DNA of 63,427 nt, counting the filler, from Octopus bimaculoides (taxonomy: Eukaryota), in assembly GCF_001194135.2 (NCBI RefSeq). It is 6 parts of 5 records of this genome, joined end to end, with 100 filler letters (N's around TTAATTAATTAA, not from the genome) between each part and the next. Parts side by side here need not be neighbours in the genome. Positions count along the whole stretch, not along the records: positions 8,941 to 21,976 come from NC_068985.1; 5 more parts are not named here. One strand, written 5' to 3'. The notes beneath the pieces were generated by a model. It ran no database searches and was not told the origin of the DNA. It saw nothing but the letters and a program-made list of their open reading frames with translations. This document shows positions 17,816 to 20,343 of this stretch, one piece after another. The position numbers and the translations under genes are program-made. Position 1 is the stretch's first letter. Each line of letters begins with the position of its first letter.

Positions 17816-18170
17816 CTTACAGAACCATCCATTGCTATTCGCCGGGGTGTCAGACAGGGGGACGCGCTCTCGCCGATCCTCTTCAACATAGCTATTGATC
17901 TGCTGCTAGATTCATTATCTACCAGCGGGGATTTGTGTGTGGAGGGGGTCCGGATGGATGGAATCACTTATGCAGACGACTTGGTCGTGGTGACGCGTGG
18001 GGGTCTCCAGGCGCTAGTTAATAGATGCTTGGGGTTCTTCCGCGATGTTGGGCTTGGGGTCGATGTCGGTAAGTGTGCGTGGTTCTCCATCCACGGCTTG
18101 AGCAAGACCTACCTAGTCAATGACAGCACCCCGCCGAATATTGACGGGTTCACTATTAAGTCAGTGGCCT
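17816..18170 (+). mobile_element. R2-type non-LTR RT fragment, motifs 4-7
   Basis: LTEPSIAIRRGVRQGDALSPILFNIAIDLLL..GITYADDLVVV..GLGVDVGKC..TYLVN..IDG. GC-rich relative to the flanks. Confidence 0.85.
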
Positions 18171-18323
18171 GCATTTCTGTGGCTAGTTGGTTGGTCGGAG
18201 AGCATTCTGGTCGGCTGGAGTGATGGTGGTCTGTCTGCTTGGTAGGGTTTAGCCTTGTGCCTCCCGTAAGTTTAACTTGATTGGTTTTGCCCATGTACTC
18301 ATGGTAATTGCTGTCCTATAATT

Positions 18324-20343
18324 ATGCTTACAAATAAGACAGAAAACATACGGCAGCCAGGCGCCGTAAATCTGGTGGACTGTGGGTCCGGGACGGGGCC
18401 TGCAGGTCAGGCTGAGCATGATACCCAAACATGCTTGGCCGTAGAGTTACCTTCCCCTGTTGTGGACAATGGACCATCTCCGCAGCAAGGTATGATCAGT
18501 GGTCCAACTGGTATCAACTGGAACGGCGACGGGAGTGTTAATAAGCTCCCGTCGCTGATATACAAAAGAAAGAGAGAGGGACTGTTTAGGTTAGTCTACC
18601 CTACTCATACGCTAGTAGTGAAGGGATCTCAGCTTCCTGAAGATCTTGCTCAGGACCCCCTCCATGACGTCCACTCTCTTACTTTAGAAGTGGACCGAGA
18701 GGCGGAAAGTGGGATATGACATCCCACTCTTGCAGGAAGCGAATTTTCGCTTCCCATCCCATGCGGATCGTGCTCTATAGCCTGTCTGCTATGTCCTCAG
18801 CGTTTCGCTTCTCCCCGTCGTTGGGGAGAACATTTAGAAGGTAGACATGGAATAAAGCCTGTCTGCAAATGCAGTAAGTGTGACAGGGAAAGCGGACATC
18901 TACATTTGATGAGGTGTCACGCCGGTAAGTGCAATGCTCTTTTTCGTGCCCCAAGTCCTGCTAGGCTCCCGTTTAAGTGTGACCACTGCAGCCGTTCTTT
19001 TTTGACGGCTGTAGGCCGTTCCCAGCACGAGCGCCATGAGCATCCTGTGGCTGAAAATGTGTGCAGGATGGCTGCTCACAAGGCTGAGCTGGCGAAAAAG
19101 CGTGTGGATCGGGCAGCCGCTGCCGAGTCAATAGGCCGAAGACGCAGAGGCTGTTGGTTGGATGAGGAAGTAGCGGTCCTCGTCAAGAAGGAGGCTGAGC
19201 TGATGGGGGCTGGTGTAAGNNNNNNNNNNNNNNNNNNNNNNNNNNNNNNNNNNNNNNNNNNNNNNNNNNNNNNNNGTGCAAACAAGTAGGGTCTAAAAGA
19301 GCAGACCTGGCCAAAAGGGCTCGCAGGAGTCATCAAGGGTCAGGTCTGCTTGATAATAGCTCCCTGTCACAAAGAGAGGAGGAATCCTCACCCCTCGTGG
19401 AGTGGAGAGATCGCTTCCTCGATGCTGCCAGTCCTGGGCATACCTGCTGGTCTGCAGTCTTCTGCGAGGCCCTATTGGAATTCGTGGAGGACGGGACAGT
19501 GGCTGCCTGGGATAATTTTGTTCGTAAAGTTGAGGACTGGCTGGAGCATAACAGATCTCGCAGAGAGGATACTACTAGCATTAAGAGGCATAGAAGGGTA
19601 GAGAACAGTCCTAATTTTCGGAGGCGAGGCAAGCGAAAAAGCTTTGCCATCGCGCAAAATTTATTCAAGACTAAGAAGAAGAGGCTCCTTGCAAGGATAT
19701 TAGAGGAGGATATTAGATCAGGGCTGCCCAATTCCTATATATTCTACAGAGGAATTTTATGGGCATAGATTTTCGACACCAGGCCCTGAGGTGGATCTTT
19801 CTGACCATCGTTCCTCCTCCATAGTTGATAGTGATCCTATTTTGAAACCATTCTCGATGGAGGAGATAAAGGTTAGTCGTAGGAAGATGGATGCCACCTC
19901 AGCGGCGGGCCCTGATGGTCTCACTGTTAGTGATATTAAAGCAGTGGACCCATCCATCCTAGCTAATATCTGTAATTGTATGTTGCTGGCCGGGAAGGTA
20001 CCTGATATCCTGAAGCGAGGTAGATCCGTCCTCGTATCAAAGAGGGCGGAAGATCCTTATGATCTCACCAACTGGCGACCACTAACGATATGTTCCGCGG
20101 TATATCGACTTTTTTCGAAAATGGTCGCCAAACGCATGCTTCAGCTAACTCCCCTTAACCCGATTCAAAGAGGGTTCATCCAGGCTGACGGCTGCAGTGA
20201 GAACTCGTTTCTCCTTCGACAGCTCGTCGGTCGCGCGATGGGGAGACCAGCATGACTGAGAATACCGCGTCTAGAAGTGGCCTTCATGGATCTCGCCAAG
20301 GCCTTCGACACAGTATCGCACTCTTTGATGTATGCGGGCCTTG
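18324..20343 (+). mobile_element. R2-type retrotransposon 5' portion: CCHH-CCHC-CCHH zinc fingers, Myb, RT motifs -1 to 3 (decayed)
   Basis: In one frame with one stop (18717-19): CLLCPQRFASPRRWGEHLEGRH, CSKCDRESGHLHLMRCHAGKC, FKCDHCSRSFLTAVGRSQHERHEHP, Myb GCWLDEEVAVL. After the gap: RKSFAIAQNLFKTKKKRLLARILE, SAAGPDGL, NWRPLTICS, QRGF, and FMDLAKAFDTVSH past a stop at 20253-55. Confidence 0.88.

What the first reader, a model, noticed from the sequence alone, without database searches (positions are those of the whole stretch)
17816..20343. R2 domains are circularly permuted: RT motifs 4-7 lie upstream of the 5' end, and the element stops just before motif 4
Seen: the order is [RT4-7: 17816-18170] - [~150-bp spacer, N-terminus, ZFs, Myb, RT0-3: to 20343], all on one strand. 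The right end (..DLAKAFDTVSHSLMYAGL) and left end (LTEPSIAIRRGVRQG..) are nearly adjacent positions in a normal R2 RT; from typical spacing I estimate about 30 codons are missing. The permutation junction (18170-18320) lies in gap-free sequence and no TSD is seen. Inference: a C-D-A-B arrangement is the signature of integration via a circular DNA intermediate opened inside the RT. The alternative is a tandem dimer trimmed on both sides.
Basis: partly seen in the sequence, partly recalled or inferred. Interest (0 to 1): 0.7.

Follow-up and report, generated by a model that had tools for sequence, protein, structure and literature searches.

The report
Circularly permuted dead R2 retrotransposon fragment
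A broken copy of the ribosomal-DNA parasite R2 sits outside ribosomal DNA in an octopus-like genome with its back half placed in front of its front half, as if a small DNA circle had been cut open and pasted in; it is a real but single, non-functional curiosity.

Summary
Window 17816-18166 encodes R2 reverse-transcriptase (RT) motifs 4-7. Window 18238-20342, on the same strand, holds the end of the 5'UTR, the start codon, three zinc fingers, Myb and RT motifs 0-3. Against the closest relative found, canonical-order Octopus vulgaris R2 copies about 76% identical in DNA, the two outer ends fall exactly 29 codons (87 bp) apart without overlap. Both blocks are equally diverged from that relative. 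The assembly gap is colinear: 16 Myb residues are missing, about 42 nt are expected, and the frame change comes from the N count. Thumb, endonuclease, 3'UTR and 28S target are absent from the piece, and there is no target-site duplication (TSD). Judged by O. vulgaris, the inner junction is about 1.05-1.1 kb inside the 5'UTR, not at the element's true 5' end. It also contains about 71 nt of unassignable GC-rich filler. A simple trimmed tandem dimer is therefore excluded, because 2.7 kb would be missing between the copies. The most economical origin is one nearly complete turn of a 2.6-kb circle reopened inside the RT and captured at a break (confidence about 0.38). Template-jumped cDNA, multi-step rearrangement and mis-scaffolding are not excluded. 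It is one dead locus of modest interest.

The parts
17816..18166 (+). Left block: R2 RT motifs 4-7 (B-E), LTEPSIAIRRGVRQGDALSP ... IDGFTIKSV. It corresponds to O. vulgaris RT-ORF residues 120-237.
   Evidence: Pfam RVT_1 profile positions 114-194. PDB R2Bm 580-699. tblastn 68% aa identity and blastn 76.6% identity to L001 11669-11997. Boundaries are shown and motifs.
18167..18237 (+). Permutation junction: 71 nt of GC-rich (56%) sequence that cannot be assigned to either block. It may be diverged 5'UTR or repair filler.
   Evidence: No significant match to the O. vulgaris R2 unit, its 5' terminus, the thumb region, the missing 29 codons or the rest of the piece. A colinear 5'UTR match is only marginal (42-53 of 500 shuffles reach it).
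18238..18323 (+). Last ~86 nt of the R2 5'UTR, homologous to O. vulgaris L001 9398-9483, immediately upstream of the shared ATG.
   Evidence: Sensitive blastn aligns 18238-18360 with 9398-9520 at 65.6% identity, E 4e-9.
18324..18719 (+). Upstream 131-codon ORF or N-terminal extension. It ends at a TGA (18717-18719) that is also present at the aligned position in both O. vulgaris units.
   Evidence: ORF list. blastn aligns 18344-18482 with 9504-9642. The shared TGA is shown.
18720..19219 (+). Three N-terminal zinc fingers (18783-18848, 18864-18932, 18972-19043) and the first half of the Myb motif (19152-19217).
   Evidence: phmmer against R2Tg gives domain 1 E 3.6e-13. tblastn gives 69.6% aa identity to the O. 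vulgaris protein.
19220..19275 (.). Assembly gap (56 N) inside the Myb motif. About 42 nt are expected from the homologue.
   Evidence: N run. O. vulgaris residues 153-168 are unaccounted for between window 19217 and 19280.
19276..20342 (+). Right block after the gap: second half of Myb, linker and RT motifs 0-3, ending at ...DLAKAFDTVSHSLMYAGL. It carries a +1 frameshift within 19690-19725 and a CGA->TGA stop at 20253-20255.
   Evidence: blastn aligns 19280-20341 with L001 10484-11562 at 71.7% identity. Pfam RVT_1 profile positions 6-85. PDB R2Tg 314-576. Lesions are shown, and the end point.
17540..17815 (.). Left host flank: AT-rich, non-rDNA, with no similarity to R2 or 28S.
   Evidence: GC 32% over 16816-17815. 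No Rfam rRNA hit. No significant blastn match to L001 (best E 0.026).
20343..20700 (.). Right host flank: AT-rich, non-rDNA, with no TSD relative to the left flank.
   Evidence: GC 35% over 20343-21342. Flank comparison. No Rfam rRNA hit.

Best explanation
This is a dead fragment of an A-clade-like R2 retrotransposon (three zinc fingers plus Myb) lying outside ribosomal DNA in a cephalopod-type genome. It amounts to one almost complete turn (about 2.53 of about 2.6 kb) of a circularised internal R2 segment.

Proposed course of events:
1. A 2.6-kb piece of an R2 copy was excised. It ran from about 90-160 nt upstream of the start codon to just after RT motif 7. R2 sits in rDNA, a prolific source of extrachromosomal circles by general knowledge, and in octopus it forms head-to-tail arrays.
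2. The ends of the piece were joined by end-joining. This created the RT7-to-5'UTR junction with up to 71 nt of filler.
3. The circle was later broken once, between RT motifs 3 and 4. It lost 87 bp and was ligated into an unrelated chromosomal break. Hence there is no target-site duplication, no 28S target and no 3'UTR.
4. The copy then picked up a CpG-type nonsense mutation and a +1 frameshift.

Shown here: the permuted order, the 29-codon gap without overlap, the equal divergence of both blocks, the absence of the rest of R2, the non-rDNA flanks and the lack of a TSD. Inferred: the circle itself, that it was DNA rather than RNA-templated, and the order of events. The locus has no plausible function.
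For: Permuted but colinear blocks lie on one strand.

The outer ends map 87 bp apart without overlap. The chance expectation is about 0.016-0.033.

The blocks are equally diverged from O. vulgaris R2: 23.8% against 22.7% overall (Fisher p 0.74), with no difference at third codon positions (p 0.26). This is consistent with one source element.

GC content is 50-56% throughout the feature, filler included, against 32-35% in the flanks.

No thumb, CCHC, endonuclease or 3'UTR homology occurs anywhere in 8941-21976. This argues against ordinary target-primed insertion, which starts at the 3'UTR. No 28S or ribozyme was found, and no TSD.

Head-to-tail R2 arrays and internally deleted derivatives exist in the closest relative, so the family lives in recombination-prone tandem DNA.

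The same signature, truncated first and last parts that together make one unit, has been proposed for reintegrated eccDNA in Drosophila satellites (PMC7403614).
Against: This is a single locus, and no second copy with this junction was found.

The parent element of the window's own genome is unknown. Microhomology at the three junctions therefore cannot be read.

The two outer ends sit on different contigs of a draft scaffold.

Reintegration of eccDNA in the germ line is inferred in the literature, not demonstrated, and I know of no R2 example.

An RNA route (template-jumped cDNA) predicts the same order.

The near-coincidence of the ends is only about a 2-3% event, so it is not overwhelming.
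Confidence: 0.38

Rival explanations
1. An RNA route. The R2 reverse transcriptase, or another LINE RT, copied the 5' piece of a broken R2 RNA from motif 3 to its 5' end. It then jumped end-to-end onto the 3' end of the other piece, which ended after motif 7, and ran to motif 4. Alternatively it ran once around a circular R2-derived RNA. The cDNA was primed at, or captured by, a non-specific chromosomal break.
For: R2 RT jumps from the 5' end of R2 RNA to a second RNA in vivo, as shown by U12 and tRNA sequences found upstream of R2 5' ends (PMC3414825).

Retro-copied circular RNAs with non-colinear junctions are described in mammals. Their authors note that structured open-ended RNAs could give the same pattern (PMC4897178).

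One cut in one RNA would explain outer ends that nearly meet. There is no poly(A) and no TSD.
Against: [quoted passage not shown]

Judged by O. vulgaris, the junction is about 1.05-1.1 kb inside the 5'UTR, not at the processed RNA 5' end. The match of the filler to that 5' terminus is at chance level.

Seventy-one nt is far more than the few untemplated bases expected at a template jump (3 were seen at the one junction quoted).

By general knowledge, R2 RNA is a nucleolar Pol I co-transcript and is not known to be spliced.
Confidence: 0.2
2. Stepwise DNA rearrangement of a head-to-tail R2 array. First, a 2.7-kb deletion from RT7 of one copy into the 5'UTR of the next. Then a segment spanning that junction was relocated or retained outside rDNA, with independent truncations on both sides.
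For: Head-to-tail R2 dimers, internally deleted 1.6-kb derivatives in tandem and degenerate 28S stubs all occur in the O. vulgaris locus.

Non-rDNA R2 copies in Drosophila are incomplete, and tandem R1 arrays and an R1/R2 fusion array outside rDNA are documented (PMC2718515).

Double insertions of TEs are proposed as a source of tandem dimers (PMC5932611, abstract only).
Against: It needs at least three independent breaks plus a move out of rDNA.

It leaves the 87-bp near-coincidence of the outer ends as chance, about 0.016-0.033.

No trace of 28S, 3'UTR or an array remains in the 13 kb available.
Confidence: 0.2
3. An assembly or scaffolding artefact. Contigs from different R2 copies were joined across the 56-N gap, a chimeric contig was formed at 18167-18237, or a tandem array was collapsed.
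For: The piece is a draft scaffold with an estimated gap inside the element. The left outer end and the right outer end are on different contigs. R2 is multicopy.
Against: Both gap edges fit consecutive residues of one Myb motif, and the predicted 42 nt is close to the estimated 56.

All three informative junctions are in read sequence.

A chimera between R2 positions made through a shared k-mer would not create 71 nt of unassignable sequence.

A mis-join would not by itself explain why the two ends nearly meet.

Both sides are equally diverged from the relative.
Confidence: 0.12
4. Two unrelated R2 fragments that landed side by side by chance.
For: Each block taken alone is just an R2 fragment.
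Against: The blocks share strand, divergence and GC content. Their ends map 87 bp apart without overlap. No host sequence lies between them, because the filler is GC-rich like the element.
Confidence: 0.05

Closest known systems
R2 non-LTR retrotransposons with three N-terminal zinc fingers plus Myb (A-clade type, e.g. zebra-finch R2Tg, PDB 9nl3/9dou); nearest sequence found: Octopus vulgaris copies on OX597831.1
   Same: ZF-ZF-ZF-Myb-RT architecture. phmmer E 1.7e-52 to R2Tg. About 72-77% nt and 51-86% aa identity to O. vulgaris copies. One of those copies is joined to the canonical 28S site, TAGCCAAATGCC.
   Different: The window copy is permuted. It lacks thumb, CCHC, endonuclease, 3'UTR and most of the 5'UTR. 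It is not in 28S and it is mutated.
Proposed eccDNA reintegration signature in Drosophila Rsp-like satellite clusters (Sproul et al. 2020, PMC7403614)
   Same: The first and last parts of the inserted DNA are truncated but together form about one complete unit. The new location is unrelated to the source.
   Different: There the unit is a short satellite monomer in multi-copy arrays, with microhomology visible at junctions. Here it is a single 2.5-kb turn of a retrotransposon segment, and the junction homology is unreadable because the parent is unknown.
circRNA-derived pseudogenes (Dong et al. 2016, PMC4897178)
   Same: A non-colinear (reversed-order) junction inside a retro-copy-like insert without a poly(A) tail.
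   Different: Those junctions are exact back-splice exon-exon joins of Pol II genes. Here no splice signals can be shown, there are 71 nt of filler, and the source is a Pol I co-transcribed element.
R2 5' chimeras made by in vivo template jumps (U12 snRNA-R2, tRNA-R2) and SIDEs (Eickbush & Eickbush 2012, PMC3414825)
   Same: Foreign or discontinuous sequence is fused upstream of an R2 5' region. Internally deleted R2 derivatives also exist in the octopus relative.
   Different: Those chimeras keep the true R2 5' end, the complete 3' end and the 28S site. The window copy has none of these.
Tandem R1/R2 arrays from double insertion (Stage & Eickbush 2009, PMC2718515; McGurk & Barbash 2018, PMC5932611)
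   Same: Head-to-tail repeats of site-specific elements. They are seen directly for R2 in O. vulgaris, where a 5.3-kb unit is 95% identical between copies.
   Different: Between two copies a dimer carries a full 3' end, a target stub and a full 5' end. The window has none of that between its blocks.

Membership tests
R2 retrotransposon (R2 clade of non-LTR elements) | R2-type reverse transcriptase domain | tested here: met
   RVT_1 matches in two pieces, profile positions 6-85 and 114-194. The best PDB matches are all R2 proteins: R2Tg E 1.7e-52, and R2Bm E 6.7e-28 and 2.6e-11.
R2 retrotransposon (R2 clade of non-LTR elements) | N-terminal zinc finger(s) plus Myb DNA-binding motif | tested here: met
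   Three Cys/His fingers lie at 18783-19043 and Myb at 19152-19321. They align to R2Tg residues 10-172 with E 5.7e-13. The three-finger arrangement fits the A-clade type.
R2 retrotransposon (R2 clade of non-LTR elements) | C-terminal CCHC motif and restriction-like endonuclease | tested here: not met
   tblastn with the O. vulgaris RT-to-C-terminus ORF finds nothing beyond residue 237 anywhere in 8941-21976. The feature is absent by truncation, so this is a fragment and not an intact member.
R2 retrotransposon (R2 clade of non-LTR elements) | Insertion at the specific 28S rDNA site, with a 3'UTR at the 3' junction | tested here: not met
   There is no LSU rRNA match in the piece, the flanks are AT-rich and there is no 3'UTR homology. 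The O. vulgaris relative does meet this feature.
R2 retrotransposon (R2 clade of non-LTR elements) | 5' HDV-like self-cleaving ribozyme | tested here: inconclusive
   No Rfam ribozyme hit was found in the window (E up to 1) or in L001 (E up to 0.01). Such ribozymes are poorly captured by these models. The first ~1.05-1.1 kb of the relative's 5'UTR has no counterpart in the window.
Reintegrated extrachromosomal circular DNA | The outer ends of the insert are adjacent positions of the source unit, so the parts together make one unit | tested here: met
   The ends map 87 bp (29 codons) apart with no overlap.
Reintegrated extrachromosomal circular DNA | End-joining scars (microhomology or filler) at the circle junction and at the integration junctions, and no TSD | tested here: inconclusive
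   No TSD was found, and 71 nt of unassigned sequence lies at the inner junction. Microhomology cannot be read without the parent sequence.
Reintegrated extrachromosomal circular DNA | The matching circle is detectable in eccDNA preparations | not testable with these tools
   This needs Circle-seq of tissue from the source species.
circRNA-derived retro-copy | The non-colinear junction coincides with a donor and acceptor splice-site pair in the parent | not testable with these tools
   The parent of the same genome is unavailable. In O. vulgaris the aligned positions are only approximately defined.
Tandem dimer by double insertion | A complete 3' end, a target stub and a complete 5' end between the two copies | tested here: not met
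   O. vulgaris dimers have about 2.7 kb between RT7 and the start-codon region. The window has at most 71 nt.

The most novel reading that the evidence does not exclude
The locus is a germ-line fossil of a circular intermediate derived from an rDNA retrotransposon. Either an R2 eccDNA reintegrated outside rDNA, or, more unusually, a cDNA made by the R2 enzyme running round a circular or nicked R2 RNA and inserted without its normal 3'UTR and 28S target. As far as my searches show, either would be the first such case for a non-LTR element.
Probability: 0.5. Interest if true: 0.5.

Novelty: new variant of a known kind. Interest (0 to 1): 0.35.

Why it matters
If the circle reading is right, the locus is direct genomic evidence that pieces of R2/rDNA chromatin can leave the array as circles and re-enter the germ-line genome elsewhere. 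That route for spreading repeats has so far been argued mainly for satellites. The locus would also give a concrete junction to look for in octopus eccDNA or RNase-R RNA data. If it is an RNA-templated product, it would show R2 reverse transcriptase acting off-target and without its 3'UTR in vivo, which bears on the specificity of R2-based gene-insertion tools. As it stands it is one dead copy in a draft scaffold, so its weight is anecdotal.

Tried and rejected
1. Rfam on the whole piece. It gave only microsatellite-driven miRNA-like hits below threshold, with no 28S, HDV-like ribozyme or R2 3' element.

2. Assigning the 71-nt junction filler. I compared it with several candidates:
- the colinear O. 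vulgaris 5'UTR: marginal, 42-53 of 500 shuffles reach the score;
- a stricter scoring of the same comparison: at chance;
- the true R2 5' terminus GTGGGGCCTGTTTC: it looked similar by eye but scored at chance, 873 of 2000 shuffles;
- the thumb/YLG region and the missing 29 codons in all six frames: nothing;
- the whole O. vulgaris locus on both strands: 2 of 60 shuffles reach the score, which is not convincing;
- the rest of the piece: nothing.

3. Whether coding homology of the left block runs on to the YLG motif (window SWLVG against O. vulgaris SYLGV). A few distant R2 proteins align that far, but there is no DNA-level support. This is left open.

4. TSD search. No repeat of 6 nt or more abuts the ends. 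One 19-nt, 84%-identical direct repeat lies 92 and 37 bp away from the ends and is probably chance.

5. Looking for other copies of the junction or an independent assembly:
- a protein word search with the left block found none;
- exact-ORF look-ups for three window ORFs found none;
- a junction 24-mer was absent from metagenome contigs.

6. The top hit of the exhaustive protein search (P0010, 21 repeated stretches) is an unrelated repetitive protein and was discarded.

7. The TGA at 18717 was first counted as decay. It was reclassified as ancestral because both O. vulgaris units share it.
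Full report
**What is there**

The piece 8941-21976 is AT-rich, at 25-43% GC in 500-nt windows, and microsatellite-rich. The exception is a 2.5-kb island of 46-53% GC (in 500-nt windows) at about 17816-20342.

Translation of that island gives R2-like peptides on the + strand only.
- The left fragment, LTEPSIAIRRGVRQGDALSP...YADD...IDGFTIKSV, matches Pfam RVT_1 profile positions 114-194.
- The right fragment...NWRPLTI...QRGFIQADGCSEN...VAFMDLAKAFDTVSHSLMYAGL, matches positions 6-85.
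- Upstream of the right RT part lie three zinc fingers (18783-19043) and a Myb motif (19152-19321).

All significant matches among solved structures are R2 proteins. Zebra-finch R2Tg is best at E 1.7e-52, and both its ZF-Myb and RT regions align. The left fragment aligns to R2Bm residues 580-699. The element is therefore an R2 of the three-finger (A-clade) type.

**The assembly gap, tested first**

The only N run in the feature is 19220-19275. The nearest protein in the databases is an Octopus vulgaris "transcriptase", P0001.
- Its residues 15-152 align up to window 19217, and residues 169-325 align from window 19280.
- Sixteen residues (48 nt) are unaccounted for, and 6 readable nt flank the Ns. 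The true gap should therefore be about 42 nt.
- The written 56 N is 14 nt too long. That excess fully explains the apparent change of frame.

The two sides are thus colinear parts of one Myb motif. What cannot be tested is whether both contigs come from the same physical copy. This matters because the left outer end lies on one contig and the right outer end on the other.

**Permutation measured against a relative**

P0001 lies on O. vulgaris chromosome record OX597831.1. I fetched 21 kb around it as locus L001. There the segments occur in canonical order:

| Window | L001 |
|---|---|
| 18344-18482 | 9504-9642 |
| 18671-19205 | 9881-10423 |
| 19280-20341 | 10484-11562 |
| 17837-18159 | 11669-11997 |

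Identity is 72-77% at the DNA level. At the protein level the right block ends at residue 90 of the O. vulgaris RT ORF (window 20342), and the left block starts at residue 120 (window 17816). The missing stretch is RRLGFHEHVLALVEGIYEGSTTRFSVDGQ, which is 29 codons or 87 bp.

There is no overlap.

The chance that two independent breakpoints fall this close without overlapping is about 0.016-0.033.

**Same source for both blocks**

Divergence from O. vulgaris is 23.8% in the left block and 22.7% in RT0-3 (Fisher p 0.74). Third codon positions do not differ either (p 0.26).

Differences are concentrated at third codon positions in both blocks. Most of the divergence therefore arose while the lineages were still coding.

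Real disabling lesions in the window are few: a CGA->TGA change at 20253-20255 and a +1 frameshift within 19690-19725. The in-frame TGA at 18717-18719 is shared with both O. vulgaris units and so is ancestral.

**The inner junction**

- DNA homology of the left block ends at 18159. Protein homology ends at 18166, at ..IKSV, before the YLG/thumb region.
- Homology of the right block starts at 18238, which corresponds to L001 9398, 86 nt before the shared ATG at 18324.
- The 71 nt in between are GC-rich like the element (56%). They match nothing significantly.

In O. vulgaris the true R2 5' end is about 1.05-1.1 kb further upstream. It is marked by a 28S-derived ...GACTCTCTT joined to GTGGGGCC at L001 2970/2971. 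Judged by that relative, the permuted unit is an internal 2.6-kb segment. It runs from the late 5'UTR to RT7 of an element of about 5.3 kb, not from the element's 5' end.

**What is missing**

No thumb, CCHC, endonuclease or 3'UTR homology exists anywhere in the 13-kb piece. There is no 28S sequence or ribozyme. No target-site duplication abuts the ends. The copy cannot be an ordinary R2 insertion, which starts from the 3'UTR at the 28S site.

**Context from the relative**

L001 contains:
- the 3' end of an R2 copy joined to the canonical 28S site (TAGCCAAATGCC at 773), followed by the 3' part of a 28S gene;
- two full-length R2 units in direct head-to-tail tandem (2966-8230 and 8275-13621, 95% identical), linked by three short repeats of a 28S stub plus the R2 5' end;
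- two 1.6-kb internally deleted R2 derivatives in tandem.

The family therefore lives in recombination-prone tandem DNA. A real dimer, however, carries about 2.7 kb between RT7 and the next start-codon region.

**Mechanism**

The most economical reading is a circle.
1. A 2.6-kb internal R2 segment was excised and closed by end-joining, which created the RT7/5'UTR junction with filler.
2. It was reopened once between RT motifs 3 and 4, with 87 bp lost.
3. It was captured at an unrelated break.

The same signature, truncated first and last parts that together make one unit, has been proposed for reintegrated satellite eccDNA (PMC7403614). I give this reading about 0.38.

An RNA route predicts the same order and gets about 0.2. 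R2 reverse transcriptase jumps from an RNA 5' end to another RNA in vivo (PMC3414825), and circular-RNA retro-copies have non-colinear junctions (PMC4897178). Against it count the absent 3'UTR, the junction lying inside the 5'UTR, and 71 nt of filler.

Stepwise rearrangement of a tandem array gets about 0.2. It fits the octopus context and the incomplete non-rDNA R2 copies known from Drosophila (PMC2718515). It leaves the near-meeting ends to chance.

A scaffold or assembly artefact gets about 0.12 and cannot be excluded without reads.

**Comparison and novelty**

R2 itself is well known. R2 in molluscs was first reported from oyster (PMC5035012). Permuted inserts are known or proposed for circular-RNA retro-copies and satellite eccDNA. 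My literature searches found no description of a circularly permuted R2 or other non-LTR fragment, but those searches cover only open-access text.

I rate this a new variant of a known kind. It is real in the sequence as given, non-functional and of modest interest.

Noticed in passing
L001 2966-13621 (O. vulgaris OX597831.1): Two full-length R2 units of about 5.3 kb lie in direct head-to-tail tandem at 95% identity. Both have frameshifts. The first is preceded by a 28S-derived ...GACTCTCTT stub.
   Followed up: partly
L001 8228-8292: Between the two tandem R2 units there are three consecutive ~21-nt repeats. Each consists of the 28S stub CTCTCTT plus the first ~14 nt of R2 (GTGGGGCCTG..). They look like repeated abortive 5' joins or template jumps.
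   Followed up: no
L001 13547-16840: Two 1.6-kb units in tandem, 86% identical to each other. Each is made of R2 5'UTR pieces, the start-codon region and the 3'UTR, at 69-90% identity to the full-length unit. They are SIDE-like internally deleted R2 derivatives in a cephalopod.
   Followed up: partly
L001 2720-2970: A degenerate 28S stub in which sequence from downstream of the R2 site (2721-2825) precedes sequence from upstream of the site (about 2880-2970). This looks like an rDNA unit with nearly everything deleted.
   Followed up: no
window 18717-18719; L001 about 9927 and 4585: An in-frame TGA separates a 131-codon upstream ORF from the zinc-finger region, and it is conserved between the window and both O. 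vulgaris units. It may be an ancestral two-ORF or read-through arrangement rather than decay.
   Followed up: partly
window 19694-19719: A 13-nt imperfect tandem repeat (AGGATATTAGAGG / AGGATATTAGATC) lies exactly where the reading frame shifts by +1 relative to O. vulgaris.
   Followed up: partly
window 17706-17724 and 20379-20397: A 19-nt direct repeat at 84% identity lies in the flanks, 92 bp before and 37 bp after the R2 sequence. It is probably chance. If real, the inserted unit would include about 90 and 36 bp of non-R2 DNA.
   Followed up: no
window 16354-16750, 17322-17410, 20730-20800: (TA)n/(CA)n-type microsatellites give spurious sub-threshold Rfam hits to mir-297, mir-466 and similar families on both strands.
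   Followed up: yes
P0010 (protein library hit): A 1518-aa protein built of about 21 near-identical ~70-aa repeats scored E 7e-28 against residues 83-114 of the left block. It is a repetitive artefact and not an R2 relative.
   Followed up: partly
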